A stretch of 64,000 bases of DNA from Anolis carolinensis (GCF_035594765.1 NW_026943823.1:8308001-8372000), one strand, 5' to 3'. Shown: positions 20,259-64,000, counted from the stretch's first letter. Numbers and translations are program-made. Notes: generated by a model from the sequence alone, not told the origin.

Positions 20259-20874
20259 AGTTGCACGATATTTTCTAGCCTACTTGCAAAACAAGCTTTG
20301 GAAAGTAAACAAAGCCTATCCTGTCGGCGATTTGGCTCGCCTGGCACAAGACAAGGCAGAAAAACTTGTCCAGGTATAATTTAAGCACATCCCTTTCCCT
20401 GTGAAGAAATGTATTTAGCTTATCTTCAGTATCATACCCTCCGAATGTCCCAAACAGGGATAGTCCTCAAACTTTTTAAACAGAGGGCTAGTTCACTCTC
20501 AATCAGACTGTAGGTGGGCTGGACTATTGTTTGTTGCTGTTGCACACCTTCAAGTCATTTAAAACTTAGAGCAACCCTATCGCTTAAGCGGCTAAAGGGG
20601 AAAAGAAAAGGGCCTGAAGCTGTTAGGAATTGTAGGAGTTGAAGTCCAAAACACCTGGAGGGCTGGAGTTTGCCCATGCCTGGTATAAAGTCTAAGGAAA
20701 TGACCGTCGTGGGCCAACGATGAAACAGAGGACCCCTGCTTTCAAATGTCTTCATTTCTCTGCCTTCCTTCCACTTTCCATTGTGGCAAACTGAGTTCAA
20801 AGTAGGGTTTCCAGGTCAAGATTTAATACATTTTCCAAATTCACATCACCTTAAAGAGCTCCAGATCCAGATTA

Positions 20875-24830: not shown

Positions 24831-24958
24831 NNNNNNNNNNNNNNNNNNNNNNNNNNNNNNNNNNNNNNNNNNNNNNNNNNNNNNNNNNNNNNNNNNNNNN
24901 NNNNNNNNNNNNNNNNNNNNNNNNNNNNNNNNNNNNNNNNNNNNNNNNNNNNNNNNNN
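24831..24958. other. Assembly gap (128 N)
   Basis: Run of N. Confidence 1.
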
Positions 24959-29300: not shown

Positions 29301-31132
29301 ATAGAGATGGCCTATTACGTAGATTAATAACCACCACCTTACAGGGGTTGCTCGGTACTGGCCATGCAGGAGAAGGCTGATAAGAGCTGTGGCTCAGCAA
29401 CATTGGGAGGGTCACACATGATCCATACCATCCTAGGCAATACAAGGGACAAACTTCAAAGAGAATTCTCTTACCTACATGAGATGGCCAGACTGTTATA
29501 TGTGGATGAGAATGATACCAGCCCACAACTCTCATAGGCCGCCCTGTTAATTCAGCCAATCTGTGTGCTAGTTAAGGTCTTGTTTTAAAAAATGTTAGAT
29601 ATGACTACACCCTAAGCTTAGCTGACTCATGTAATATCAGACTAGTTACAAATGTAAATCACTTCTAAAAAGTATACGAGACAAAAAAAAGTATTCTTAA
29701 TTTTTTAAAAAACCACTGTTTTTCATAGATACCCCATAATTTCCATCAAAGGATATCTCTGCTTCCGTTGAAGCAGCCGAGAGCTGCTCAGGAGAAATCT
29801 CCACGCGGTCCTTTCTTTTATCCGACCTCCGGAGAATGATCACAGAATGAATGTGGACAATTCGGCTAGTGTCGACCTGGAGATAAATCCAGAAAACAAC
29901 CCTTATTGATAGCTCCTTGTATTTATGCCCCAGTTCAAGGCACATATTGTGGGTTATTCTGCCTTGATATTCTGGGTTATATAGCTGTGTGGAAAGACCC
30001 CCAGTTCAGAGCAGAATGTGGGATTTTATATGGGGACGAGAGACAGGGCCTTTTCAGTGGCGGGGACGAGAGACAGGGCCTTCACGGTGGCGGGGACGAG
30101 AGACAGGGCCTTCACGGTGGCGGGGACGAGAGACAGGGCCTTCACAGTGGCGGGGACGAGAGACAGGGCCTTCACGGTGGCGGGGACGAGAGACAGGGCC
30201 TTCACGGTGGCGGGGACGAGACAGGGCCTTCACGGTGGCGGGGACGAGAGACAGGGCCTTCACGGTGGCGGGGACGAGAGACAGGGCCTTCACGGTGGTG
30301 GGGACGAGAGACAGGGCCTTCTCAGTGGTGGGGACGAGAGACAGGGCCTTCACGGTGGCGGGGACGAGAGACAGGGCCTTCACGGTGGCGGGGACGAGAG
30401 ACAGGGCCTTCTCAGTGGTGGGGACGAGACAGGGCCTTCTCAGTGGAGGCTCCTCGGCTGTGGAACTCCCTCCCCAGTGATATCCGGCAGGTTCCATCCC
30501 TTCTGAGTTTTAGGAAAAAAGTGAAGACTTGGCTTTGTGAGCAAGCATTTGATGAGTGAATTCTGTTGGCTTTGACTCGGGCCGGATCATGGTTCATGTA
30601 CAAGGTTTTGCGGACGAATGGTTCAAGTATTTTATACTCTATTGTTTTAAATGCATTTATTGTATTTTGTTAAATTATCCAATTGTTTTAATTGCTTATG
30701 TTTTATCTTTTTGTATTGTATATTGGCATTGAATTTTTGCCAGACTGTGAGCCGCCCTGAGTCCCTTCGGGTGAGAAGGGCGGGATAGAAATGAGGGAGA
30801 TATATAAATAATAATAAATTATATAGCTGTATGGAAGGGCCCTCAGGACCCTGAATATCAAGGCAGAAAATCCCACAATATCTGGTTTGAACTGGGTTAT
30901 CTGAGTCCACACTGCCATATATTCCAGTTCAAAGCAGAAAATGTGGGATTTTATTCAGCTGTGTGGAAGGGGCCCAAGAGACGGGAGGAAGGGCAGCAAG
31001 GCCTGGGCCTGCGCGCGGACGCCTCACCTCCCCGATGCAGAGGCCCATGACCTCCTCCTTCTCGGTGCTCAGCGCGTGGTTCAGGCAGACCAGGAAGGCG
31101 TCGGCCTCCAGGTGGGCCGCCTGCACCGCCAT
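26314..31132 (-). CDS. BRCC3: Lys-63-specific deubiquitinase BRCC36 (JAMM/MPN+), complete, 8 coding exons, 261 aa
   Basis: Exons 31132-31028, 29876-29757, 29562-29475, 28916-28828, 28273-28218, 28084-27953, 27106-27063, 26465-26314 sum to 786 nt in frame. MAVQAAHLEADAFLVCLNHALSTEKEEVMGLCIGE...VVGWYHSHPHITVWPSHVD (JAMM motif)...ELLKELAALE*. Candidate AATAAA on minus at 25872-25877. Confidence 0.97.
28364..28393 (-). repeat. Short interstitial telomeric repeat, (GGGTTA)4 on minus
   Basis: TAACCC x4 on plus, inside BRCC3 intron 4. Confidence 0.8.
29563..29756 (-). other. U12-type (minor spliceosome) AT-AC intron of BRCC3
   Basis: 5' end ATATCCTTT, branch site ACCTTAAC 8 nt before the 3' end, terminal AC. 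Only the AC acceptor keeps the ...EAE/RLAEL frame. Confidence 0.92.
30032..30445 (+). repeat. 30-bp minisatellite (~14 copies) derived from L2 ORF2 sequence
   Basis: Unit GGGGACGAGAGACAGGGCCTTCACGGTGGC; the last copy continues into RAFSVEAPRLWNSLP of the L2. Confidence 0.9.
30032..30818 (+). mobile_element. 5'-truncated L2 LINE inserted into a MITE-like element in BRCC3 intron 1
   Basis: ORF2 C-terminus RAFSVEAPRLWNSLPSDIRQVPSLLSFRKKVKTWL, then a 3' UTR and the GCCGCCCTGAGTCCCTTCGGGTGAGAAGGGCGGG tail; candidate TSD TTATAT at 30026-30031 and 30819-30824. Confidence 0.85.
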
Positions 31133-31720: not shown

Positions 31721-31862
31721 TTGGAACTGGGTTATCCGAGGCCCTTTTCACACTCCTGAATAAATTCCCACATCTGCTTTGAACTGGAATATATGGCAGT
31801 GTGGACTCAGATAACCCAGGGCCCATAACCCAGATAATTCAGACTGGGGGTCAGCCTGTTGT

Positions 31863-32833
31863 AACTCAAAGCACAGATGTCTATAATCTACAGTGAAACG
31901 TAAAAAGGAAAGTATGGTATATAATGTGAGGATACTACGTTGGTAATGTAATATTATCTTCTATATAAACAACTTTTAGTGGCACTTGTTATACAAGCTG
32001 CAAAAGAAGGGGATTATGGTGTCATATTAACAACAATCTAAACTGGATAGTGGTAGATCATAGCCCTCTGGAAACTCTTATGTTTACTAATAGTATATAT
32101 TGCAATGAATACTTTACTTTAGGTATCCACTACTTATATTCTCTTTCACTACATTAGTATAGTTCTTAACATAAAGGAATACACTTAGCAACACTTACAA
32201 AGGTATTATGGAAAAACTATTCCTATTTATAGTTTAAGTGTCAGTTATGTCAAATAGAAATCAAAACCAGATAAAGTCTTATTGTTGACTTAATAACAAT
32301 CAAAATTGCTGTCGCAGCGTTGAATCAAGGTAAATAAACAGTTCTTAACATGCATATGTACATAAAGGCAACCCTTCACATAGGCCTTAACATAAAACTG
32401 TTGTAGTCTCTAGATTGATTACAATCTTGTCCAATCAAATAAATGAAAAACAAGCAGAATCTACTGCCCTCTTGATAGTGTTCTCAAGTGTTGCTGGAGC
32501 ATAGAAAAAGACAGTTCAGTAATTAATATATCATCTTTATAAGTTCTTCTCAGAGTAGCTCTTGGATACCAGACATATCACGATGTCTTAAGGGTTAAAT
32601 AAATAGATTGTTGTTTCTAGATGTTGATACCAATCCGTTGTAGGGTATCTGGGATGGCCAAGTGATCTGTGGTGCCGGGGATGGTTACGACTGGTTTCCC
32701 GGGTATAGGCCAGTTTCGTTGCTTCTTCAGGTAAACCAGATTTCCCACTGTTTGTTTGGGCTAAAGAGTGGTGTGGCTCTGCCTTCTTGATTCTTCTATA
32801 CATATAAAAATAAAGAGAGAAACTATCTAATAT
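31863..32833 (-). mobile_element. Non-coding insert with a hammerhead ribozyme motif (Penelope-like or retrozyme-like), flanked by a ~112-bp direct repeat
   Basis: Direct repeats at 31750-31862 and 32834-32944; hammerhead motif at 32682-32738; no recognisable ORF. Confidence 0.65.
32682..32738 (-). ncRNA. Type I hammerhead ribozyme motif
   Basis: UGGUUUAC-CUGAAGA-agcaac-GAAA-CUGG(15-nt loop)CCAG-UC-GUAACCA: full catalytic core, 5-bp stem III, 7-bp stem I with one bulge, minimal stem II, GUC cleavage triplet. Confidence 0.75.
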
Positions 32834-35575
32834 ACACTCCTGAATAAATTCCCACATCTGCTTTGAACTGGAATATATGAGTGTGGACTCAGATAACCCA
32901 GGGCCCATAACCCAGATAATTCAGACTGGGGGTCAGCCTGTTGTGGCAGATTCAAAATCACATCATTTATTCATGGCACTGAAAAGAGTCAGGCTCTTTC
33001 TTGCACTTTCCCAGCAGCACTTATCTGGTTGGCCTAGGCAGGATTGATTCAGAAGTGAAAGTTTTCTCAGCAAAGTTGCCCCACCCTTCCAAACTGCGCC
33101 TCAAATGTCCCAAGAGGCCTTCAATTCACACATTCAGAAATACAGCATTCAACCGGCATCACTGCACTATTTCCCCATGAATCCTATTAAGGTCATTCAC
33201 TCTAACATAACCAATTACAAAAAAATATATAGTGGTTTAAGAGTTTGATAAATTTCGTGTTCATGCAAAACACTGAAATTGTGGAAAGAGGACAGTCAGC
33301 TTAGTAACTATGGATTCCAAGGGTGTCTGAATTGCCTTTCAATTTCTTAAAAATGGGGGAAGGAACAGCATTGTGTGTGCCGATTTCATGATCTGAGTCC
33401 TACTTCCTGCTTGGAAACAGGTTGCATGGAACTTATATAGCACTGACTCACAGTTTCTCAAGTCTGCGCCCTCCTCAGCATATGGCATGCTTAGCAAAAG
33501 GGCTTGAATGAATTCTTTTGGCTCGAGAATTGGCCTTTTTCAGTCTGATTGCAGGTGCAAAGAGCGCTTTTCTCTTGGGAGTTGACACTTGAGTCCCCTC
33601 CATTTTTACTAGATTTATATTCTCAATGTATTTACGTGTTAAGCCGACTTTCCCTTTATAAAAGTTCAGAATCTTGTTGCTGTTTAACTGCTTGTTACCA
33701 AAAGAAAGAGAATGTTGGTTTTTTTCTGTCCACTGGGAAAACATACATTTTTTCTCCCTAAAATCTTTATATCAGATTTCTTGTTTCTTTCCTTACATTA
33801 CTAAAGTATGATTTTCCTGATCTGCATTTTGCTATTGTTCATCCTTTATCCAGTTTGGGACTGAGAACGCCATAAGAAGTTTCATCTGTAGGATGATATT
33901 CTTGTACATATTTCATTTGTGTTTCACTTTGTATAATCAATGGGATAATAAAATAATTGTCCGTGTGCACGAAGATCACCACGTCACCAATGACTGGGAA
34001 GAAGCATCTTCTTTCTTTGAAATACCGTTTGTGATTCTAGACCAGAAAACACTGCCTAACCATTTAGTTAGAGCAGGGAAAGGAAGGGCAGGAGAATATC
34101 CTGCTCATTTGGAAGGAAGTGAGATAGCAAATTTCCCTCCTCCTTCTCATTGTTTTGAATTCTTTCTCTCTTAATTATTGCCAGCAAAGGTAGTTACTAT
34201 GACTGACCGGTTATTTTGAATCACAGCTCTCATCGGTCCTCACTATTGGGCATGTTTACTAAGGCTGGTGGGTATCTGGAGGACCACAACTGAGCATATA
34301 GTATTTTAAGAACAGCAGAAGAAAGAAGTAAAGCAGAGGTATGATTGGTGCAGTTCCTCTGACTTCAAGATTTTCTGCCAGAATGAGACCAGCCCAGATC
34401 CTCCCTTCTCTGATGCCCCACGGAAGCAGAGAGTAGAGAGATGAAGAAAAAACATCAGAGAAAGGAAAGAAGAGACAGGAAGACAAGCTGCTGAAAGGAC
34501 TCAGTACCAATTAAGTTGTCAACTAAGGTATCTCCTGGACAGATTCAGTCAGTCACACAGCATGAATCCTCAAATACTTTGCAGATGACATAAAGGTCTC
34601 ACTGAACAAAGTCAGATTACAAGTCATGGCTCTGTAGCACTACTTCTTTCTGAAGATGAAATGTGCCCTTTAGGTGAGGTGTAACTCATTTTGAATTCCT
34701 TCTACGGTTACAGTGTGGAAGGCATATATTTCCTAAATTTCTCCCCTACTAACCCCTTTCCTCATTTTTTAAACGTTTCATTAAAAAACAAGTTTTTATG
34801 CCTCAGTTAACAAAGCAGATATATCCTTGGGCATTTTTAAATAGTTAGATTGGTCTGTTCCTGTACACCAAAACCAAAGAGGAAAAAAGGAAGAATAACA
34901 ATAATATCCAGCAAACTTTTTTTACTCAGAGCTAACAATATGGGTATATAGAAACCAAATCAGGCTAGCCTTGCATGAGAGATTGAAACATTTTGAACTT
35001 TCTAGAGCCCATTTGAAGGCTTCTTCCAAATATGATTTTCACTCACTTTCTTCCACTTTTCTCATTATTTCCATTTTGGTGGTTAAACCTATAGATCTTT
35101 TTAATGTATCAGGGCTAGCTGGTGAGGCAGGCCCTTTTTGCTTTGCTGATTTCACATAAACAGTAAGGGATTCTGGAAACAGCTGCCATTTATCTGGCTG
35201 TTGGAGGCAGGAAAATGTAACTCCAATAGGATTGGCTGCAGTAGAATCCCACACTTCCCCACATCAAATTTTATTGCAATGCTTACTCTTCGGACATTGC
35301 AATCAGATTCTCTGGTCCTCCTTCATCATCCTCCCAGTGCTGATGTTGCTAAAAACCTAAAGCGGGAAATGTACTCAGGCAAAAGGAGCTGGTGGGCTGC
35401 AAAAAGAACGTTCTGGTTGAGAGGCTGTGTTAACTGAGGTATATGCTTGTACAACAGAACCACATGCTAGGTGGGTAGAGAACTAACAGTTCATTCCGTG
35501 TCTTTATTCCAAGGCCAAGGGGACCATGTGTAGAAGGGGAATGGAGGGAGGGCCTTCCTAGCAACGTAATTGGGA

Positions 35576-43500: not shown

Positions 43501-46500
43501 CTAAGACGCCAAGCCAAGCAGAAACCCTCCAACGAACCCTCCAGTCAGGATAACATTTTTCTTCAAAAAGCGGATCACCTGGGTAGAAGAGAAAGGAGAC
43601 TTGTGTTGGCCAAACTAGGGCTCCTTGCTGTATCAATTCTTAAGACATGGCAACATTTGCATGGCTCAGCAGCCAGTTAGGAAGACGTAAAAGAGGAAGG
43701 TATGAGTATCTCTCTTCCCTTGATGCACTGTTCAACCAAACAAGTGCCCAGATGTCCAGCAAGAGCCCACTGACCCAACACAATCTAATGCTCACAGAAA
43801 GGTGAATCCTACAGCTCTTCAGATGTCAGTGAACTATGAAGCCCAGCCAGCACATCCCACAAAAGGAATGCTGGCAATCCAACATGTCTGGAGACTGATG
43901 TCTGGCAGAAAAAGGGACTAAGGATCATAATGTATGAGTATCAAAATGTTTTTTTAAAATGATGTTTCTTGCTTCATAAAGTACCACTTCTAAGTGGCCA
44001 GCTGAAAGATCTCACCTCGTCCACTCGGGTCTTCACCTCTGGCGGTAGCTCAGTGTTAGGGCTGCTGCGGAACTTCAACTGCTCCTTCGCTTTGTTCACA
44101 TCTCGCTCAACCATTTTCCAGTCGACTTTGATGTATCCCGTGTGATTGGCAACCTGGAAAAGGGGAAGGTGCTCTGAAGCATATTATGTACCCAAACCCA
44201 GGTCTTTCTGGAAGACTTGCTCCCATCTACCCTCCATCGACATCACTGTGGTCCTAGGAGAGTAATCCTTCAAAGGGCTTTTAATGTAGGAAATTGCGAT
44301 GAAAGTAATGTTGGCATTTTACATACGGATTTTTCCACAATGGATTCCACGATTCCTCCTACTTGGTCTGATGAGTAAGAAGGTAAATAAGATCTGAAAT
44401 ACATCCCTTGCAATTTACTTATACAGTAGAGTCTCACTTATCCAAGCCTCGCTTATCCAAGTTTCTGGATTATCCAAGCCATTTTTGTAGTCAGTGTTTT
44501 CAATATATCGTGATATTTTGGTGCTAAATTTGTAAATACAGTAAAGTCTCACTTATCCAACACTTGCTTATCCAACATTCTGGATTATCCAACGCATTTT
44601 TATAGTCAATGTTTTATTTATTTATTTTTATTTCCAATATTTCTATCCCGCCCTTCTCACCCGAAGGGTCTCCGGGTGGCGTACAATTGGCAGCAATTTG
44701 ATGCCGATACATCATTAAAAACAACAACATATAAAAATATATTACAACCAATTAAATACAGTATAAAATATAAAACATAAAACATATGCTTAAAATCCGT
44801 TCGTCCAATATCCTCCAACTTTATCCATATAACAGTCTGGGTCGTCTTTATCATTTATTCGTTAAAAGCCTGGGCACATAGCCATGTTTTTAAGGCTTTT
44901 CTAAAACTCCAAAGGTTTTCAATAAATCATGATATTTTGGTGCTAAATTCGTAAATACAGTAATTACTACATAGCATTATTGTGTATTGAACTACTTTTT
45001 CTGTCAAATTTGTTGTATAACATGATGTTTTGGTACTTAATTTGTAAAATCATAACCTAATTTGATGTTCAATAGGCTTTTCCTTAATCTCTCCTTATTA
45101 TACAACATATTCGCTTATCCAACGTTCTGCCAGCCCATTTACGTTGGATAAGCGAGACTCTACAGTAATTACAACATAACATTACTGTGTATTGAACTGC
45201 TTTTTCTGTCAAATTTGTTGTAAAACATGATGTTTTGGTGCTTAATTTGTAAAATCATAACCTAATTTGATGTTTAATAGACTTTTCCTTAATCCCTCCT
45301 TATTATCCAAGATATTCACTTATCCAAGCTTCTGCCGGCCCATTTAGCTTGGATAAGTGAGACTCTACTGTAGTTTCCTTTCTGCCTAGCTCAGTTGGGA
45401 GATCTATCCTTCAAATGTGCTGCATTGTAGGACATGGGAGTGAACACACCTTTCTCTATGGCAGAGGTGTCAAACTAGTGGCCATCTAGATGTTTGGGAT
45501 TCCAACTCCCAGAAGCCCTAGCCAGTTTGTCCAAAGGTAAGGAATTCTGGGAGCTGAAGTCAAAAACAACTGGAAGGGCACAAGTTTGACACCAATGCTC
45601 TATGGAGTCAAGGGAAGGAAGATGAGTAACCTGGGCCTAGATCTCAATAGCTTACTTTAATGGGGATAGTAGGAACACTGGACATATTCTGCCCAGAGCT
45701 GGAGTTTAACAGCATCTGTAGGGCCATATAATTATTATTTTATTTCTTACCCATCTCTTCCTGTGGCTCAAGGCAAGTTACAACACAATTAAAATACATA
45801 AACATTGTAAAAATTCTATAAATAATATACATATTTATAGAAAAGATACATATTAAAATGTATTTCTATAAAATACTTATTAAAAAGCATGGAACAGAGA
45901 TTAAAGACAAGACAAGAGTTTAACATTCATGCTTTAATGTGTTGTTGAAGGCCTTCATGGCCGGAATCACTGGGTTGTTGTGAGTTTTCCAGGCTGTACA
46001 AACTAAGGCCCGGGGGCTGGATGCGGCCCTCCAAGGTCATTTACCTGGCCCCCGCCCTCAGTATTAGACTTAGGCTCACCCAAAGTCTGAAATGACTTGA
46101 AGGCACACAACAATAACAATCCTACTTAACTTGATTATCTCATTGGGCAGAAGCAGGCCCACACTTCCCATTGAAATCCTGATAGGTTTATGTTGGTTAA
46201 AATTGTTTTTTTTTAAATTATTGTATTGTTCTTTCATTTACCAATATTGTGCTATGGTAATAATATAATATATTGTGTATACATATTATATTATTAATAA
46301 TATTATAATGCCATACAATATAATAATACTAATAAAAATACAATATAATATTAATTATACATTATATATTAAATTTAATATTACTAATAATATTACCATA
46401 TAGTGGTATAGTACAATATTGTAATATATAATGCTAATATTGTGCTATGCTAATCTATATATATAAAAGAGTGATGGCATCAGGGCAGCGGACAAAACAA

Positions 46501-49500
46501 CAAAACTACAGGCCCCCCAACCTCAAAATTTGACAACACAACCCATCATTCACGGCTCTAGGTTGATACAACAAAAAGAAAAGAAAAATAAAGTCCTAAT
46601 TACAGGGAGAGGAATAATAGTTTTTATCCAATTGCTGCCAGTTTGAAGGCTAGGCTCTGCCCACTTGGTCTCCTAGCAACCTCCTCAGCCCAGGGGACAG
46701 GCACAGTTAGGCCTCACTTAGGCCTCTTCCACAGATTATCAGATTTGAACTGGATTATATGGCAGTGTAGACTCAAGGCCCTTCCACACAGCTATATAAC
46801 CCATTTAGAATCTTATATTATCTGCTTTGCACTGGATTATCTTGAGTCCACACTGCCATATAATCCACTTCAGTGTGCATACTAAACATAAAGACAACCA
46901 TACAATAGACATTCAATACCACCACTACCTCAACAATTTCTCACCAACACCACCAGACAACGCCACAGCAACGCGTGGCCGGGCACAGCTAGCACTGTAA
47001 TATATTGTATGTACATACAACTTGTAAGCCACTCTGACTCCCCTTCGGGGTGAGAGAGGGTGGGATATAAATGTAGTAAATACAAAAATAAATAATTGTT
47101 GTTGGGGGGGTTTTGCACTACAAATAAGACATGTGCAGGGTGCATAGGAATTAGTTGGGTTTTTTTTTCAAATGATAATTCGGCCCCTCAAGAATCTGAG
47201 GGACCATGAACCAGCCCTCCACTTCAAATGTTTGAGGACCCCTGCTGTACATGTTCCAGAAGCATTTTCTTCTGAAGTTTACCTCACAATCTATGAGGAT
47301 GCCTGCTATAGATGTGGGTGAAATGTCAGGAGGAAATGCTTCTGGAACATGGCCATACAGACTGGAAACCTCACAACATTCATGCTTTAAACTGGCTGGC
47401 TAGGCCACTTCACCATACGTTCCCTGGGCCTGATCTATGAAAACAGAGGATCCCAATGGTTCTCTGTTCACTCCCAATAACATGCATCAAAATGTGACCA
47501 CAATGCAGTACTGCCAAGGAGCAGTAGGGAAAACTCATTGCATGTTCAATCTGGGCTGTGGCGCAGGCGGGAGAGCAAGCCAGCTGCAACTAGCTGCAAT
47601 GAATCACTCTGACCAGGAGGTCATGAGTTCGAGGCCCGCTCGGAGCCTATGTTTGTCTTGTCTTTGTTCTATATTAAAAGGCATTGAATGTTTGCCTATA
47701 TGTGTAATGTGATTTGCCCTGAGTCCCCTTCGGGGTGAGAAGGGTGGAATATAAATGCTGTAAATAAATAAATAAATAAATAAATATTGGCTACACAAGC
47801 CTGGCCTGGGGTTGGAATCCAGATAATGACCTAAATGGCTCACTCGTGTGAAAAAAACACACATGTTATAACTACAGGTTAGAAAAAATACCCTTTGGGG
47901 CTCACTGCTTGCAGGATTCTGGGTAGACCATAAAGGAAATGTTTGCAGCCCTGATCAAAATTGTATTTTGGAAGTCTCAAAATACGCTTATATAGTTACC
48001 AACCTGGAGCAGAAAGAAGCCGCCTCCCACGGCAGTCGCAGCCAGCTTCCCAACCTTCTGGAAAATGAAGCCAGTGCACCTGCACATCGAAACGTAGGGA
48101 AATGGCACTTAAGTATACAAAAGTAAGAAAATATAAGAGTATAGAGCAGGCATGGGCAAACTTTGGTCCTCCGGGTGTTTTGGACTTCAACTCCCACAAT
48201 TCCTAACAGCCTACCGGCTGTTAGGAATTGTGGGAGTTGAAGTCCAAAACACCCGGAGGACCAAAGTTTGCCCTACTCTTCCTCCCTCCTTCCCAGCAAT
48301 GCACACAAAGCCCACACAAAGCAAAGCGCCTCACCATCCTGTGGCTCCTCCAATGGCCAGCTGGCTGGCAACGCTGTATTTTTCCGCGCTGGACCCCGAG
48401 TTTGGCTTAAAGAGCTTTCGCCACCAGGGCCGCCTCTTGGTGTACTCGGCCAGGTCCAGCACCTCATCAATACCTTGCTTTCCTGCACGTTAATAGGAAG
48501 AAGGCATAAAAGAAAGCCAATTATACAACTGCTTTTTAGTCTGCCTCGCAATCTATGTTTCACTGTTGCACTGAAAGCATACGGAAAAGGAGAGGCTGCT
48601 GAAAGAACCAATAATCGTCCCAGGATGCAATTTGGGACAAGGTTTCAAGACCTACTTCCCAGTGGCACCACAGAGGGCCACTTCACCTTGCAGCAGTGGC
48701 ATTGCAGAGGGTCACTTCACCTAGTCACAACTGTTATGGTACAAAACATACCAACCAGACCTATTTCCCAGTGGCATCACAGAGGGACACTTCACCTAGC
48801 AACAAGCTTTATGGTACAAAACAGACCAGACAAATCTACTTCCCAGTGGCATCACAGAGGGCCACTTCACCTCGCAACAGTGGCATTGCAGAGGGTCACT
48901 TCACCTAGCAACAGCTTTATGGTACAAAACAGACCAGACAGACCTACTTCCCAGTGGCATCAAAGAAGTTCACTTCACCTAGCAACAAGCTTTATGGTAC
49001 AAAACATACCAGACAAACCTATTTCCCAGTGGCATCACAGAGGGCCACTTCACCTAGCAACAAGCTTTATGGTACAAAACAGACCATACAGACCTACTTC
49101 ACAGGGGCATCACAGAGGGCCACTTCACCTAGCAACAAGCTTTATGATACAAAACAGACCAACCAGACCTATTTCCCAGTGGCATCACAGAGGGCCACTC
49201 CACCTAGCAACAAGCTTTATGGTACAAAACAGACCAGACAGACCTACTTCCCAGGGGCGTCACGGAGGGCCACTTCACCTAGTAACAAGCTTTATGGTGC
49301 AAAACAGACCAGACGGACCTACTTCCCAGGGGCATCACGGAGGGCCACTTCACCTAGCAACAACTGTTACGGCACAAAACAGACCAGACAGACCTACTTC
49401 CCAGTGGCATCATAGAGGGTCACTTCACCTAGCAACAACCTTTAAGCTACAAAACAGACCAGACAAACCTATTTCCCAGTGACATCTCAGAGGGCCACTT

Positions 49501-49870
49501 CACCTAGCAACAGTGGCATCAGAGGCCCACTTGGCCTAGCAACAAACTTTATGGTACAAAACTGACCTATTTCCCAGTGACATCAGAGCGCCACTTCACC
49601 TAGCAACAAACTCAATGGTACAAAACAGAACCTATTTCCCAGTAACATCATAGAGGGCCACTTCACCTAGCGACAGCAGCATCGAGGGCCACTTCACCTA
49701 GCAACATCCTTTTATGTTATAAAACTGACCTACTTTAACCTATATACAGAAGCATTTTGAAAATAATTTGGTGCTTGGAAGAAAGTTTGTGTGCACTGAA
49801 CCCCGCCCCATCTATACTGTGGAACTAACGCGGTTTGATACCGTTTTAATTGCCATCGCTCACCGGCCAT
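43501..49870 (-). CDS. FUNDC2: FUN14 domain-containing protein 2, 5 coding exons, 148 aa from the strong-Kozak ATG
   Basis: Exons 49870-49864, 48482-48335, 48079-48004, 44153-44016, 43578-43501 (447 nt). [27 protein letters not shown]...[54 protein letters not shown]...[16 protein letters not shown] and adjacency to CMC4 favour FUNDC2 over FUNDC1. Confidence 0.93.
44424..45370. mobile_element. Family A MITE containing a second family A MITE, itself containing an L2-type 3' fragment
   Basis: Outer TIRs at 44424 and 45370; inner copy about 44539-45163; L2-type tail on minus about 44615-44915. Confidence 0.75.
46454..46992 (+). mobile_element. Non-autonomous Helitron nested in a hAT element (about 45999-47244)
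   Basis: A|TCTATATATA start and GCCACAGCAACGCGTGGCCGGGCACAGCTAG end. Confidence 0.8.
48655..49730. repeat. 60-bp minisatellite in FUNDC2 intron 1
   Basis: Unit approx. CCCAGTGGCATCACAGAGGGCCACTTCACCTAGCAACAAGCTTTATGGTACAAAACAGACCAGACAGACCTACTT-type; copies line up at 60-nt intervals across 48901-49480. Confidence 0.95.
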
Positions 49871-50308: not shown

Positions 50309-50442
50309 CAGGCCTGGGCAATCTTGGGCCCTCCAGGTGTTTTGGACTACAACTCCCACAATTCCTAACAGCCGGCAGGCTGTTAGGAATTGTGGGAGTT
50401 GTAGTCCAAAACACCTGGAGGGCCCAAGTTTGCCCAGGCCTG
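50309..50442. mobile_element. Palindromic hAT MITE (134 bp)
   Basis: Near-perfect inverted repeat CAGGCCTGGGCAA...TTGCCCAGGCCTG; degenerate 8-bp TSD GTGTAGAG/GTATAGAC. Relatives at about 48147-48273, 60245-60360 and 45462-45597. Confidence 0.85.
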
Positions 50443-51714: not shown

Positions 51715-54639
51715 TTATGAGGTCTGTTGAGCACTAACTCTGCTGATATCTTCTTTGGTCACTGAGAATGAAAAATCTTTGTTTTTCCCTCTACCGGTCT
51801 GTGTCCTGATTGGGACTTAGGTGGAATATCCTTTCCTGCCATTTGAATCCATTGTTCCCGTTGCAGCAAAAAACAAGTTTTCAAGTGTTTCAAGGAAACT
51901 GGGATTCGGCCTGTACATAATAATACCCCATCGGTCTCTTGGCTGCATCCATCGATTCAGGATGAAACCTCAGCAAGAAGGGGATTCTTGGATAGAGAAA
52001 GAAAGGCCACGCTGCAGCCGCACTTCCAATATTGTTGATGTAAAAGTGTTGCTAATCGGCGATCGCAGATTCCTGATGCCACAGGAAACCCAGTAATCAG
52101 ATGTAGCTGTGGGTATCATCAGACAGATTCTACACCGACTACTGAGCAGCCCATTGGCATCCAATCCCAAGGAGTCCTGGTCCCTCTTGGCTCAACCAAG
52201 GGCCGTTCCAGATGATCATGATGCTGGTGACGTTTTGAGCATATTCCTGTGATGTATTCCCTGTGAAAACATATGACTGATCCAAAGTCACAGTTAATGT
52301 CATGCGCCAATGCAGCCCAACTTCATTTCTTTGTCTAATGCCCTAATACAACATTAATTTACTATACTGACCTATCAGTGACCTTCAGGAAGCCCACCAG
52401 TAGGACACAAGGACAACTAAGCTCTCTGTTTAATATTCCACCCATTTCCAGGAATATTTGTGGTCATTGCATGCCTTCAAGTTGTTTCTGGCCTATGGTG
52501 GCCCTCAGGCAACCCTATCATGGGGTTTCCTAGGGCTGAGAGTATGTGACCCTCCTCAAGTCCATCAATAGGTTTCTGTGACTACAACTGGTCTCTACAA
52601 TTATAGCTCAACACTCAAAGTGCTGGTCCTCATGCTGCCTCTAATATTGCTGCAGTCTGGTAACAACCACTGACACACCTTGAAAAGGAGACTTGTGTGG
52701 ACTACAGACCCCAAAATTCTCCACTATCACAATTTGGGGTGGCGGGAGTTGTTATCCAAAAGGTAACATTTCCAAGTACAGTAGAGTCTCACTTATCCAG
52801 CACTCGCTTATCCAACGTTCTGGATTATCCAACACATTTTTGTAGCCAATGTTTTCAATATATCATGATATTTTGGTGCAAAATTTGTAAATACAGTAAT
52901 TACTATGTAGTATTACTGCATATTGAACTACCTTTTCTGCCAAATTTGTTGTATAACATGATGTTTTGGTGCTTAATTTGTAAAATCATAACCTAATTTC
53001 ATGTTTAATAGGCTTCTCCTTAATCTCTCCTTATTATCCAACATATTCGCTTATCCAACGTTCTGCCGGCTCGTTTATCATCATCCCCATCATTTAATTA
53101 CTTATTAATCGCCCTCCATCCACGATGCTCTAGGCGATTTACAAGATAAAATTGTAAAGGATAAAAATACATACATACAAATATTGATAAAATTAACATA
53201 GATTAAAAGCTCTAGTAAAGAGCCAGGTCTTGAGTGCTAGGGTAAAAGGCCCTAACTCACGCATGTTGGATAAGTGAGACTCTACTGTACTGACCACTGA
53301 TGATCTTAACCACTGGTTTAGCTAGTTCCTCTACAAGATCATACACATGGACAGCTATATAATCTTTTTGCCATGTGGACTTCTCTTGGCACCTTACTAT
53401 GTTCTCAGGAAGGGCCAGCACATTTAGATACATCCTGTAATTATTAAGGGAGATGAGAAATTTTAAAAAAATCTAACCTTGTTCATCAGGAACTTCCATC
53501 CCCAGAAAAGCCATTTCTTTTGGTTCTCTACTTCAAGTTGCCTTTCAATAGGTTGGAAACATGTTGCCATCAATAGTCCTTTCATGCATGAACAGGCCGT
53601 TGCGACATGGCTGTATCCCTCCAAGGCTGTGCCGGCTTCTCTGAACAAGATGTGGTTTGCCGTCCTAATATTAATAGCTTTGCCAGCAGGTGAATTCCCC
53701 TTTCTTGCCGAGGCCCCTTTCTCTTCCTCTGACTCACCTCAACAGGGACAACCCCGATCTACAGATCTCAGCAAGGCGCATCCAAGATACATCAAAGTGA
53801 AATAGGCAGAACAAGACAAGACAGGGAAACTACCTGGCTCCTCCTTCCCTCTATTTTTTTAATTCTCATTTTCTGGAAATAACACTCTCTCTCATGTCGC
53901 CAGTGGACCTTCACTCAGCATGGTGCAGCAGGGACAATTTAGGGAGATGGAGGTTTACGAAGAAATGAAACATAAACTCATCACACTCTGTCAGAGCTTG
54001 ACTTATTTCATGGGTTGTCATGAGGTTAAACTGGATAAACAGAGGGACATGTGCACTGCCTTGAGCCCATTGGATGAAATGTGGGGTATAAATGTGATTA
54101 AGAAAGCACACAACAATAACAACAACAACAACTTTATTTTTATACCCCGCCTCCATCTCCCCAAAGGGACTCAGGAAGGCTAACATGGCGCCAAGCCCAG
54201 GTAATTACAATGAAACAAAATAAAATATAACACATAATATCACATAATAAAACACATAACACACACCATCAGCAGGTAAAAATGCATCAAGATAAAAACA
54301 CAATTACAGTGGAGTCTCACTTAACCAACATTCGCTTATCCAACGTTCTGGATTATCCAACACATTTTTGTAGTCAATGTTTTCAATGCATTGTGATATT
54401 TTGGTGCTAAATTCGTAAATACAGTAATTACTACATAGCATTAATGTGTAATGAACTACTTTTTCTGTCAAATTTGTTGTATAACATGAAGTTTTGGTGC
54501 ATAATTTGTAAAATCATAACCTATTTTGATGTTTAATAGGTTTTTTCTTAATCTCTCCTTATTATCCAACATATTCACTTATCCAACATTCTGCCGGCCC
54601 ATTTATGTTGGATAAGTGAGACTCTACTGTATACACATG

Positions 54640-59566: not shown

Positions 59567-60729
59567 AAATGATATAAAACTCTGACAACCCGTCTTGCGA
59601 ATTCGAAACAGCAACCCAATCTTCAGGCCAGCAGTCCAGCCGGCACAAGGGTTTAATCCATTGCGCCACTGCGGCTTTGATGCAAAATATATCTTCCTTT
59701 TCCAATTTAGCACCAATAATGATGCTAAATTGGAAAGGGGAAATATATTTTGCACCAGAGCTTACAGTAAGTTATGGAAAACCATAAAAATATAAACAAA
59801 AGCTTTTTGCTAGCGAACCCACGGTTTGTCAACAAACAAACTAAAAATATTCATAAATTTCTTGTCCCATATTCAGGGTCAGAATGCATTTTCTCCCCTA
59901 GGCCTAACACCAGAGGAGTGACTACATTTGCTGTCACCAGGGCTGTTTCCTGCACAAGGCAGAAAGTGTAGGTAGAGGCTGAAGGTTTCCAGTCAGTCAG
60001 ATAGGAAAGTCCCCAGAAAAAAAATTGGGTGTGCTTTTGGGAATCCCGGAGGATGAGTTCATTGTGCCAGGGATTTCCACCATCACCACAGCCGGGTATC
60101 TTTTCTGGGACACAGAATGTAGGCAGAGCTTTGAAAAGTTACTTTTTCTAGCACAAAACCCAAATGCTCCAGCTTGATGGGTGGAGAATTCTAGGATTTA
60201 TGCTTAAAAAAGTTAGAAACAGAGTAGAATAGAGAATAGAGTCCAGGCCTGGGCAAACTTGGGCCCTCCAGATGTTTTGGACTTCAACTCCCACAATTCC
60301 TAACAGCCTACCAGCTGTTAGGAATTGTGAGAGTTAAAGTCCAAAACACCTGGAGGGCTTGAAGGGGCAAGGATGTAAAAGATGTAAAAAATACTCCTCT
60401 TAATCCAAAGTCAAAAGCAGGAGGCCCCTTTTTCTGTGAAGAGGGTGAGGAAAAACACCACAAAAGTTGAGTCTTCAAACTGCAAAAGAACTATTTATTG
60501 TGTGGCCATAGCAATGTCCCAAATGCATACATGAAATCAAAGGATTTGTCCGAATTTCCAAAATGGTTGCAAGGGTTTTATCACCTCCGCAGAAATTAGC
60601 AAGCATATCCTTATTGGCTTACAAAGATAATTTACCCCATTTGTCTAATGTTGTCTACATCACAAGCATCTTAACCATCATGAAATCCCATTGGTTTTCT
60701 ATGCTGTAACAACATGTAATTCTTTAGAC

Positions 60730-62011: not shown

Positions 62012-62837
62012 GTTTATTTATATCCCGCCTCCATCTCCCCCCGAAGGGGACTCCTGGTGGCTTACAGCAAAATCAGATACAAAACAATAAAATATGAAAC
62101 ATCAAAGAACAAGCAGCTGAAAAAACACAACGCGGTATTAAAACATCGAATTAAAAACAATGAGGTTGCAATAGCGGATAAGCAAGGTGCACATTATGAG
62201 TTATTTTAAATAGATAAAGTGCAATAGATTCATTTAAGATCACATTGGGTAGAGAGGAGCCCTGAATTAATATCAAGTAATCAGGAAAAGAGCGACTAGT
62301 ACAAAACAGAGGGGTTCGTACATCGGTCCATACTCACCATGTAGTTGTTTCTGGTTTTCCCAATGATGTTTTGAAATTGCTGGTCTTTATTGTGGAGTAA
62401 AATGGATTAAATATGAGCCGGAATTGGCCTGTGCCATTCCTTCTCCATGGTTGCATGGACCACCTCTGCTGATGCCATCACTGAGAGATGGCTGGGGGTG
62501 TCAAGGTGATGGTCCAGCAATGCTGAAGCAGTCTTGGTCTGTCTGGACTGGCTGGATTCCACTACATCTTACGTTGTGGGTGGCTGCCTCTGGAGGCAAT
62601 TCATAGCATTATTCTCCATGAAGCGGCCAATGTAGATGAATCCAGAGTCATTAATTGAAGCCAGTCTAAAACCACATTACTAACAGTTAACAGGAACAAT
62701 TGGTTGTGATCAACAAAGCTGCAGGGGAGCTGCTGGAAGCTTTACGTCCTGTGATCTCATATCATCAAGTATCTAACTCATGGTGTCAAACTTGTAGCCC
62801 ACCAGGTGTTTTCGGCTTCACCTCCTAGAATTCCTGT

Positions 62838-63618
62838 TGTAATGAAGTACAAATTTTTGGTTTACAAATGTTATGTTTAATTGTGTGTTTGTGTTTTAGA
62901 AGGGTAAGTATTGCAGTTGCTGCTCTCAACACCCAGAGGCTGGTTGCCATGGAGAAGTGGGTAGAGCCAACTGCCTTTTGCTGAGGAAGAGCAGAGTTTA
63001 AAAAAGAGAGCCAGTCTGTGCTCTGATGAGGCACAGGGAAGACTGAACCTAGGTTAAAGAGATCAGGGAGACTCAATTGGTCATTTTGAGTCAGTTTAAA
63101 ATAACTTTGGTGACTTATTTAATATAATCTGTGTCCTAGTAAGGAACAGAGAGTCTGTGAAAGCAGATCACAGGGGTGACTGTGATATAAAAGTTGCTGA
63201 GGAATTGAATTTCCTAAAGTAAAGGAAGTAATATTTTAGAGAGTTGATTCATCTTATTCAAGTATTGTAACTCTTCGTGAGAAACTTCATTGTAACCATT
63301 AAGCTTTGTGCCTGAATAAACTTGTTCTTGTTTTTCCAACATCGAAGCCTCTGTCATATATATTTTGAACCAAGTATGCTACCATCTAAAGTAAATAAGT
63401 AAAAGAAGAAAGGAATAAAACGTAAAAGATCTTCTTCCTGAGTCTTTGGTGGCTAGATCATTTCAATTGGTTGTTCCATCTTTCCAAATTGGTGGCAGTC
63501 ATAATTAGCTCCATTACAAATTGGTGGCAGCTCTTTGTAATTAAGATTTTTTACAAAGTGGTGGCAGCGGTGGGATAAAAAGATCCCTCCCCCTATACGT
63601 AGTAATAACCCCTTTACA
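62838..63618 (+). mobile_element. Solo LTR (781 bp) with an internal tandem array of tRNA-Leu PBS repeats
   Basis: TGTAA...TTACA termini, 5-bp TSD CCTGT, TATAAAA at 63186, AATAAA at 63315. It splits a hAT MITE whose halves rejoin when the LTR is removed. Confidence 0.88.
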
Positions 63619-64000
63619 CCTGTCTATTGGACAAGCTGGCAAGGGCTTCTAGAAGTAGGAGTCTGAAACATCTGGAGGGCCACAAGTTTGATGCCTCTGA
63701 TTTAGTTAATCAGTGTTGCCTATTTAACATCTGCTGTGATCGTAGTAATTTCTCGATCATTCAGAAAAGGATGGTGTCACGTATTCAGCGTAATGGGAGT
63801 CTGACATCTTCCTCTATGGAGCAGAAGCTCCCACTGCCTCCAGCTTCTTGGATTTGGAGAGGTTGCCATTATCTGGAGCTGCACTTGCCCCGACATCCAA
63901 CTGTCCTACTATTCGCGCCCAAACATGAATCAAAGAACATGAAAGGCACTGCAGACTAACTCAACCAGAGAAGTCAGCCATTTCAGAGCACGTGATGAAC

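What the first reader, a model, noticed from the sequence alone, without database searches (positions are those of the whole stretch)
63440..63623. Solo LTR carrying a polarised, CRISPR-like array of tRNA-Leu primer-binding sites with unique spacers
Seen: inside the TSD-bounded LTR (62838-63618), TGGTGGC(AG) recurs at 63447, 63490, 63522 and 63559, separated by non-repeating spacers of about 20-40 nt. The last three copies are each preceded by an LTR-end-like ...TTCCA/ATTACA/TTTACA plus 3 nt, which is the normal LTR-PBS junction geometry. The match lengthens toward the 3' end (7, 9, 10, then 18 nt). Established: TGGTGGCAGCGGTGGGAT is the exact complement of the 3' 18 nt of vertebrate tRNA-Leu (…AUCCCACCGCUGCCACCA), and a PBS normally lies outside the LTR. 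Inference: the U5 end has grown repeatedly by absorbing the old PBS plus a new spacer with a new integrase end, leaving a chronological record. Possible roles include decoys for tRNA fragments or PBS-binding repressors, multi-site priming, or capture of ends from helper elements. I cannot confirm from memory that this is undescribed.
Basis: partly seen in the sequence, partly recalled or inferred. Interest (0 to 1): 0.82.

Follow-up and report, generated by a model that had tools for sequence, protein, structure and literature searches.

The report
Repeated tRNA primer sites inside LTR
A 781-bp leftover end-repeat (solo LTR) of a lizard jumping gene has four head-to-tail copies of its "LTR end plus tRNA-Leu primer site" junction inside its 3' end; these look like duplications made during reverse transcription, not a CRISPR-like record, and similar arrays occur in unrelated elements from other animals.

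Summary
TGGTGGC starts at 63447, 63490, 63522 and 63559, matching the tRNA-Leu(AAG/TAG) 3'-end complement for 7, 9, 10 and 18 nt. The last three copies follow TTCCA/TTACA plus 3 nt.

The element 62838-63618 is a real insertion. Its flanks belong to one palindromic MITE-like repeat. With the element and one CCTGT removed, they align without a gap to an uninterrupted copy at 45462-45594. So a perfect primer-binding site (PBS) lies inside the integrated LTR.

The CRISPR-like reading is not supported:
- A pattern scan of metagenome contigs found the same anatomy in 15 loci from about nine retrotransposon families, including classical Gypsy and Gmr1-like gene orders.
- In young arrays (L015, L008, L010) the spacers are near-identical duplicates.
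- Some L008 and L009 units carry the tRNA T-arm complement in register.
- The anole spacers share a TAAT(T)A motif in register, which is weak, post hoc evidence.

Best reading (about 0.6): the U5-end/PBS junction was tandemly duplicated during reverse transcription. Priming then shifted downstream, so older junctions were absorbed into U5.

No other anole copy could be fetched, so variation in unit number is untested. Six unchecked first-reader notes of this scan report similar arrays elsewhere in this genome.

The parts
62833..62837 (.). Left copy of the 5-bp target-site duplication, CCTGT
   Evidence: The empty-site alignment needs a 5-nt gap only if both CCTGT copies are kept.
62838..63618 (+). 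781-bp solo LTR, TGTAATG...CTTTACA, with short terminal inverted repeat TGTAA/TTACA
   Evidence: There is no second copy in the window, and no Rfam or tRNA match.
63186..63192 (+). TATAAAA, candidate promoter TATA box near the U3/R boundary (inferred from consensus only)
63315..63320 (+). AATAAA, candidate polyadenylation signal. A second AATAAA lies at 63414-63419, so U5 starts near 63340 or near 63440. The array lies in U5 either way (inference).
63447..63489 (+). Unit 1: PBS-like TGGTGGC (7-nt prefix) plus a spacer ending TTTCCA+AAT. It is not itself preceded by a CA end.
63490..63521 (+). Unit 2: TGGTGGCAG (9-nt prefix) plus a spacer ending CTCCATTACA+AAT. This end is the best inverted-repeat partner of the LTR 5' end TGTAATGAAG.
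   Evidence: (families D1 and I11).
63522..63558 (+). Unit 3: TGGTGGCAGC (10-nt prefix) plus a spacer with the CTTTGTAA/TTACAAAG inverted repeat, ending TTTACA+AAG
   Evidence: (I3, D14).
63559..63618 (+). Unit 4: perfect 18-nt tRNA-Leu(AAG/TAG) PBS (63559-63576) plus a 42-nt tail that ends in the true LTR terminus CCTTTACA
63619..63623 (.). Right copy of the 5-bp target-site duplication, CCTGT
62786..62835 (.). Left arm of the palindromic MITE-like host repeat into which the LTR inserted
   Evidence: I1: 50 nt, 76% complementary to 63642-63691. Paralogous copies at 45462-45594, 50319-50432 and 60254-60359.
63642..63691 (.). Right arm of the same MITE-like host repeat

Best explanation
This is a solo LTR of a tRNA-Leu-primed LTR retrotransposon of the green anole. 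The parent is probably Ty3/Gypsy-like, but its clade was not determined.

The 3' part of its U5 is a short tandem array of one module: LTR terminus (TTACA), 3 nt, then the start of the tRNA-Leu primer-binding site.

The proposed history has four steps, all inferred:
1. The U5-end/PBS junction was duplicated in tandem during error-prone reverse transcription, by template switching or mis-annealing around the primer tRNA.
2. Because each copy carries its own integrase-type CA end, a downstream copy could take over priming.
3. The cDNA primed from the downstream copy carries everything upstream of it in both LTRs, so older junctions became internal to U5 and the LTR boundary moved 3'.
4. Only the PBS actually used is re-copied from the tRNA in each cycle and stays a perfect 18-mer. 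Upstream copies are truncated or decay, which gives the apparent polarity.

Shown here: the anatomy, the insertion boundaries, and the recurrence of the same module arrays in unrelated families.
For: 1. Boundaries. The joined flanks, minus one CCTGT, are colinear with an uninterrupted paralogous MITE copy at 45462-45594 (133 bp, 80%, no gap). Keeping both CCTGT copies forces a 5-nt gap.

2. Module structure. An 18-nt core is repeated three times at 15-17/18 identity in LTR-end + 3 nt + PBS geometry. Tandem Repeats Finder calls a 37-nt tandem repeat over units 3-4.

3. Recurrence. The pattern TGGTGGCAG-N(15-45)-18-mer found 15 metagenome and WGS loci in about nine families. In most of these families the PBS-like copies are preceded by ...ACA plus 1-3 nt (in the two-unit families L003/6/7, L004 and L009 only the true PBS is), and the last copy is perfect and followed by leader and gag. 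Pol domain orders include classical Gypsy (L013: RNase H then IN) and Gmr1-like (L011/L016: IN before RT).

4. Duplication origin. L015 units 1-2 are near-identical. L008 has six or seven 39-40-nt units, two of them with perfect PBS copies separated by a spacer that carries its own CATTACA end. That matches the state inferred for the anole LTR.

5. tRNA-templated content. An L008 unit has TCGAACCC at positions 19-26, in exact register with the tRNA-Leu complement. L008 and L009 upstream units match 6-9 of 12 positions at 19-30, against about 3 expected.

6. Six other first-reader notes report tRNA-Leu PBS arrays inside or just after LTRs elsewhere in this genome. These are unchecked leads.

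7. Two-PBS retroviral vectors are reported to initiate at either site (Voronin & Pathak 2004). Only the title was seen; the details are from memory.
Against: - No other anole copy of this LTR could be obtained. There is none in the window and the LTR ORF has no relatives in the protein database. So it is unverified that both LTRs of a full-length copy carry the array and that a further PBS follows.
- The anole spacers cannot be aligned with statistical support. The shared TAAT(T)A motif is post hoc (p about 0.01).
- The upstream copies keep a sharp perfect prefix followed by unrelated sequence, and the 18-nt core is far better conserved than the rest of the unit. Simple neutral decay of whole-unit duplicates does not predict this. 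It hints at selection on the core or at repeated re-creation of the junction.
- The polarity seen in the foreign loci is partly imposed by the search pattern.
- L003, L006 and L007 (80-87% identical) keep a fixed two-unit array, so arrays are not always dynamic.
Confidence: 0.6

Rival explanations
1. The array is a selected functional module. The several U5-end/PBS junctions would serve as alternative initiation and integration sites (multi-site priming). Alternatively, the upstream partial copies, often folded against the next LTR-end module, would regulate primer annealing or soak up 3' tRNA fragments or PBS-binding repressors. The duplication origin is the same as in the best explanation, but the copies are kept by selection.
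For: - The 18-nt core is 15-17/18 identical between units, while the spacers are not alignable.
- Sharp prefixes of 9-10 nt are within the range of working PBS lengths. The Drosophila Gypsy PBS is 11 nt (PMC1635307).
- The same architecture recurs in about nine families from distant hosts.
- Upstream units tend to fold so that the PBS-like prefix pairs with the following LTR-end module. Mean z is -1.4 over 20 units; L008 units score -2.9 to -4.3 and anole u1 and u2 about -2.
Against: - There are no functional data.
- The whole anole array does not fold better than shuffles (z = -0.57).
- Units u3 and u4 are not significant in the unit folding test, and that control used mononucleotide shuffles of very short sequences.
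- Recurrence could reflect a recurrent replication error rather than selection.
- Ascertainment by pattern inflates apparent conservation of the prefix.
Confidence: 0.2
2. It is not a plain solo LTR. The parental LTR ended at 63555, and 63559-63576 was the single functional PBS. The 42-nt tail is leader sequence joined to the last few bases of the 3' LTR by a post-integration deletion, through microhomology at a TTTACA-like module.
For: - The perfect 18-nt PBS sits exactly 3 nt after a good LTR end, TTTACA.
- In every foreign full-length-type locus the perfect PBS is the one followed by leader and gag.
- Other first-reader notes describe arrays 'after the LTR' (unchecked).
Against: - The integrated unit ends at 63618 with a TSD confirmed by the empty site.
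- The terminal 15 nt (AATAACCCCTTTACA) differ at several positions from the 63555 end (AATTAAGATTTTTTACA). A young element's 3' LTR would be expected to carry the 63555-type end.
- The deletion would have to use about 6 nt of homology, when more than 700 nt of LTR-LTR homology was available.
- L008 shows that two perfect PBS copies, separated by a spacer with its own LTR end, do coexist.
Confidence: 0.1
3. One reading: a CRISPR-like chronological record in which each new unit adds a unique spacer and a new integrase end captured from elsewhere, for example from helper elements.
For: - The anole spacers are not significantly alignable to one another.
- Match length rises toward the 3' end: 7, 9, 10, 18 nt.
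- The additional copies not imposed by the search pattern lie upstream of the perfect PBS in L001, L008 and L015, and none with an exact prefix lies downstream.
Against: - In relatives the spacers are duplicates of one another or are derived from the tRNA.
- The anole spacers share TAAT(T)A in register, and Tandem Repeats Finder aligns units 3-4.
- The spacers have no match elsewhere in the 64-kb window.
- No acquisition mechanism for foreign sequence is known or needed.
- L003, L006 and L007 keep a fixed array across 13-20% divergence.
Confidence: 0.03

Closest known systems
Canonical LTR/PBS junction of LTR retrotransposons and retroviruses (tRNA-Leu-primed examples include ERV-L/HERV-L; recalled from memory)
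   Same: TG...CA LTR, 5-bp TSD, an 18-nt complement of the tRNA-Leu 3' end including CCA, and 2-3 nt between the terminal CA and TGG.
   Different: Here the junction occurs four times in tandem, and all copies, including the perfect PBS, lie inside the TSD-bounded LTR instead of once just outside it.
Engineered retroviral vectors with two primer-binding sites (Voronin & Pathak, J Virol 2004; title seen, content from memory; PMC400373 not held)
   Same: Two same-sense PBS copies on one RNA. Initiation at the downstream one would carry the upstream PBS into the strong-stop DNA and therefore into both LTRs.
   Different: Those are laboratory constructs. This is a natural array, each copy has its own integrase-type end, and the upstream copies are truncated.
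Bipartite or dual PBS of Ty3 and Drosophila Gypsy (Gabus et al. 2006, PMC1635307)
   Same: More than one tRNA-complementary site on the genomic RNA of a Ty3/Gypsy element. The Gypsy PBS is short (11 nt).
   Different: Those sites lie at opposite ends of the RNA and pair with different parts of the tRNA. Here the copies are tandem, all complement the same 3' acceptor end, and all lie in U5.
tRNA read-through and tRNA-mediated recombination products in retroviruses (circle junctions carrying tRNA sequence; 'HITME' recombination in HIV-1; recalled from memory, only glimpsed)
   Same: tRNA sequence beyond the 18-nt PBS is copied into viral DNA. L008 and L009 units carry the T-arm complement in register.
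   Different: Those were described as rare in-culture products, not as fixed tandem arrays in genomic element families. The anole units u1-u3 show no tRNA match beyond the prefix.
CRISPR arrays
   Same: Only a superficial likeness: a short conserved repeat alternating with dissimilar stretches of 20-40 nt, and an apparent polarity.
   Different: No foreign-derived spacers, no acquisition machinery, and repeats that grade in length. In relatives the spacers are duplicates or are tRNA-derived.

Membership tests
Solo LTR of an LTR retrotransposon | TG...CA termini with a short terminal inverted repeat | tested here: met
   TGTAATG...CTTTACA, with TGTAA/TTACA as the inverted repeat.
Solo LTR of an LTR retrotransposon | 4-6-bp target-site duplication at the exact ends, with an empty site lacking the element | tested here: met
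   CCTGT on both sides. A paralogous uninterrupted MITE copy at 45462-45594 aligns without a gap once the element and one CCTGT are removed.
Solo LTR of an LTR retrotransposon | Promoter and polyadenylation signals in U3/R | tested here: inconclusive
   TATAAAA at 63186; AATAAA at 63315 and 63414. These are consensus matches only, with no transcript data.
Solo LTR of an LTR retrotransposon | Other genomic copies, including full-length elements with two such LTRs | not testable with these tools
   No copy in the window. The LTR ORF has no database relatives. The scan index gave no look-alike.
tRNA-Leu primer-binding site | At least 18-nt complementarity to the tRNA-Leu 3' end including CCA | tested here: met
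   63559-63576 matches 18/18. Reference sequences come from PMC10591036 and PMC6103689 (mammalian tRNA, anole tRNA gene not examined).
tRNA-Leu primer-binding site | Lies immediately 3' of, and outside, the 5' LTR | tested here: not met
   All four copies lie inside the TSD-bounded LTR. A further external PBS cannot be seen in a solo LTR.
Ty3/Gypsy (including Gmr1-like) element | gag-pol with the characteristic domain order | not testable with these tools
   A solo LTR has no coding part. Foreign arrays belong to both classical Gypsy (L013) and Gmr1-like (L011/L016) orders, so the array does not identify the clade.
Simple tandem duplication (minisatellite-like) | Units alignable over their whole length | tested here: inconclusive
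   Tandem Repeats Finder: 37-nt period, 1.9 copies, 77%. MAFFT keeps only the core columns invariant. Spacer-only alignments are not significant. The in-register TAAT(T)A motif has p about 0.01, post hoc. The feature is clearly met in relatives L015, L008 and L010.
CRISPR-like record | Unique spacers of foreign origin, added in polar order | tested here: not met
   In relatives the spacers are duplicates or tRNA-derived. The anole spacers share a motif. Polar addition among anole copies could not be tested.

The most novel reading that the evidence does not exclude
Tandem U5-end/PBS junction arrays may be a conserved, selected feature of tRNA-Leu-primed Ty3/Gypsy lineages from insects to lizards. 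They would be generated by tRNA-templated read-through plus template switching. They would let the element prime and integrate from several alternative sites, so that the LTR boundary moves between generations, or would shield the true PBS from tRNA-fragment or repressor attack. The graded copies would be a partial record of past priming sites.
Probability: 0.2. Interest if true: 0.7.

Novelty: new variant of a known kind. Interest (0 to 1): 0.5.

Why it matters
Textbook LTR elements have one PBS just outside the LTR. Here a perfect PBS and three partial ones lie inside a TSD-proven LTR, and the same module array turns up in about nine unrelated families.

This suggests that the LTR/PBS boundary is more plastic than usually assumed, and that reverse-transcription accidents around the primer tRNA are repeatedly fixed.

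There are practical consequences. LTR-finding software that anchors on 'PBS follows the LTR' will misplace boundaries in such families. PBS-based counts of tRNA-fragment target sites will count these copies.

If the copies are functional, they would be a new layer of control of primer use. If not, they are a useful natural marker of template switching during plus-strand strong-stop synthesis.

Tried and rejected
- Other copies in the window: blastn of the LTR against the window found only itself.
- Fetching anole copies through an LTR-encoded ORF: the 83-aa ORF at 62828-63076 (-) has no relatives in the protein collection.
- Viral contigs pattern scan: 0 hits.
- Full-length relatives with both LTRs:
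  - No locus holds an LTR pair.
  - The WLWD Gmr1-like element (L016) shows no 3' LTR within 4 kb downstream of pol.
  - The SCAN-bearing Gmr1-like family P0002 (L017-L024) has no tRNA-Leu PBS and was dropped.
  - Exact look-ups of L004 gag and the L015 ORF gave only short contigs that break inside the array.
- tRNA or SINE origin on the minus strand: no tRNA by ARAGORN and no Rfam match at E up to 1 in 62700-63750.
- Global RNA structure of the array: not better than shuffles (z = -0.57).
- tRNA complement beyond nt 18 in anole units u1-u3: 1-3 of 12 matches, which is chance level.
- TSD around LTR+PBS in L003: none, so the unrelated sequence after its PBS is not an LTR boundary.
- Long ORFs of the window: no Pfam hit, so no retroelement gene to link to the LTR.
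- Literature: ten searches found no paper describing tandem U5-end/PBS arrays. Term matching was crude, so this is weak evidence that the feature is undescribed.
- None of the fetched contigs looked human.

Full report
**Setting.** The window is vertebrate DNA. Earlier notes of this scan name the genome as the green anole; I did not verify this independently. The finding lies 380 bp from the window's end.

**1.
- The sequence shows TGGTGGC at 63447, 63490, 63522 and 63559.
- Contiguous identity to the complement of the tRNA-Leu 3' end is 7, 9, 10 and 18 nt.
- The full 18-mer occurs once in the 64 kb even with three mismatches allowed, and in none of 100 shuffles.
- Two papers confirm that it complements the 3' end, with CCA, of mammalian tRNA-Leu(AAG/TAG).
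- The last three copies are preceded by TTTCCA/ATTACA/TTTACA plus AAT/AAT/AAG. They form an 18-nt repeat family at 32- and 37-nt spacing, 15-17/18 identical.
- A window-wide search for any TGG-initiated 9-mer recurring within 20-90 nt found only ordinary satellites and this array.

**2. The LTR boundaries are real.**
- The element reads TGTAATG...CTTTACA and is flanked by CCTGT on both sides.
- Its flanks form a 50-nt, 76% inverted repeat (I1). They belong to a ~130-bp palindromic MITE-like repeat with further copies at 45462-45594, 50319-50432 and 60254-60359.
- The two flanks joined, with one CCTGT removed, align colinearly and without a gap to the uninterrupted copy at 45462-45594. If both CCTGT copies are kept, a 5-nt gap appears exactly at the junction.
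- This is an empty-site test. The inserted unit is 62838-63618 and it made a 5-bp duplication. The suggestion that the true LTR ends at 63555 or 63518 is rejected for the integrated unit.
- A TATAAAA (63186) and two AATAAA (63315, 63414) place the array in U5 (consensus matches only).
- There is no tRNA gene and no Rfam family in the region.

**3. Are the spacers unique?**
- In the anole copy the evidence is thin either way. Spacer-only alignments are not significant, and MAFFT keeps only the core columns invariant.
- On the other side, Tandem Repeats Finder aligns units 3 and 4 as a 37-nt repeat at 77%. Spacers 2-4 share TAAT(T)A at a fixed 5-7 nt from the TTACA end (195 of 20000 shuffles; chosen after looking).
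- The end of unit 2 (CTCCATTACA) is the best inverted-repeat partner of the LTR 5' end (I11). That is compatible with an older LTR end at 63518.

**4. Relatives elsewhere decide the matter.**
- No other anole copy could be fetched.
- A pattern scan of metagenome and WGS contigs for TGGTGGCAG, 15-45 nt, then the 18-mer returned 15 loci. The viral collection returned none.
- The 15 loci fall into about nine families: L001; L002/3/6/7; L004; L008; L005/9/11/12/14; L010; L013; L015.
- The anatomy is the same throughout. In most families the PBS-like copies are preceded by ...ACA plus 1-3 nt (in the two-unit families L003/6/7, L004 and L009 only the true PBS is), the upstream copies are partial, and the last copy is perfect and followed by a leader and a gag-like ORF.
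- Pfam shows both the classical Gypsy order (L013) and IN-before-RT, that is Gmr1-like (L011, L016).
- In the young arrays the 'spacers' are plain duplicates. L015 units 1 and 2 differ at one of 41 positions. L008 has six or seven 39-40-nt units. L010 units share GGGATTGG..GTTTGT.
- L008 carries two perfect PBS copies separated by a 21-nt spacer with its own CATTACA end. This is the state the anole LTR implies.
- Some upstream units contain tRNA sequence beyond the 18-nt PBS. One L008 unit has TCGAACCC at positions 19-26, in exact register. L008 and L009 units match 6-9 of 12 positions at 19-30, where about 3 are expected. So at least in those families the unit was copied from the primer tRNA, not captured from elsewhere.
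- Anole units 1-3 show no such extension.
- L003, L006 and L007, at 80-87% identity, keep the same two-unit array. L008 and L015 are related and differ in unit number. Arrays can therefore be stable or dynamic.

**5. Mechanism (inferred).**
- During replication the plus-strand strong-stop DNA ends with a copy of the tRNA's 3' end joined to the U5 terminus. That junction is the repeated module.
- Template switching or mis-annealing at this step can duplicate it.
- Because each copy brings its own CA end, priming from a downstream copy still yields an integrable cDNA. That cDNA then carries the upstream junction(s) in both LTRs.
- The PBS in use is refreshed from the tRNA every cycle, while unused copies are not. 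This explains a perfect last copy and poorer upstream ones.
- Work on two-PBS vectors is the experimental analogue (title seen; content from memory).
- Simple decay does not explain two things: the sharp perfect prefixes, and the much better conservation of the 18-nt core compared with the spacers. This leaves room for selection on the cores.
- Upstream units also tend to fold so that the PBS-like prefix pairs with the next LTR-end module (mean z = -1.4; L008 units -2.9 to -4.3; anole u1 and u2 about -2). The whole anole array, however, does not fold unusually well.

**6. Rivals.**
- A post-integration deletion that left LTR + PBS + a stub is disfavoured, because the true terminus differs from the 63555 end and the event would need microhomology only.
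- The CRISPR-like record is not supported, for the reasons in sections 3 and 4.
- Chance is excluded by the statistics in section 1 and by the recurrence in section 4.

**7. Novelty.**
- Ten literature searches found no description of such arrays.
- The nearest published items are the dual PBS of Gypsy and Ty3 and engineered two-PBS vectors.
- The searches were crude and many journals are not held, so I rate this a new variant of a known kind, of moderate interest.
- Six other first-reader notes describe similar arrays elsewhere in this genome. They are unchecked and were used only as leads.

**Housekeeping.** None of the fetched contigs was taken for human. 

Noticed in passing
window 62786-62835 / 63642-63691; also 45462-45594, 50319-50432, 60254-60359, 20625-20664: A ~130-bp palindromic MITE-like repeat occurs at least four or five times in the window. 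The LTR inserted into the central loop of one copy.
   Followed up: partly
window 52074-52157 (-): A mir-221 precursor: Rfam RF00651, 70.4 bits, E = 5.8e-14. It is the only Rfam family above gathering score in the window.
   Followed up: no
window 31750-32944: An earlier first-reader note (s1-570508) reports a hammerhead-ribozyme-bearing insert here. The Rfam gathering-level scan of the whole window reported no hammerhead family. No permissive scan was run.
   Followed up: partly
window 15880-17450; 30050-30390; 48730-49620 (+) and about 49050-49650 on the minus strand: Three minisatellite arrays with periods of about 28 (or 14), 30 and 75 nt, seen while scanning for other TGG-initiated tandem repeats.
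   Followed up: no
window 24831-24958: A run of 128 N (assembly gap or masked stretch). Left untouched.
   Followed up: no
L002 and L003 (oriented L003 5313-6114): An 802-bp LTR plus a two-unit array plus PBS is homologous to L006 and L007 up to the last base of the 18-nt PBS. The sequence then becomes unrelated, with no TSD around LTR+PBS. This may be a non-autonomous or recombinant derivative.
   Followed up: partly
L016 (GCA_012263305.1, WLWD01000757.1), gene 4001-8494: An intact 1497-aa polyprotein with integrase upstream of RT (Gmr1-like order), preceded by a two-unit tRNA-Leu array. No 3' LTR is detectable within 4 kb downstream. A lone TGGTGGCAGCG lies about 430 nt after the stop codon.
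   Followed up: partly
L015 1753-2526: An ORF with a baculovirus F-protein (errantivirus env-like) domain lies only about 1.5 kb downstream of a tRNA-Leu PBS array. The element is probably internally deleted.
   Followed up: no
window 63569-63598: The last 5 nt of the perfect PBS (GGGAT) pair with ATCCC 6 nt downstream, giving a small hairpin where the tRNA complement would have its T-arm stem. Not significant on its own.
   Followed up: partly
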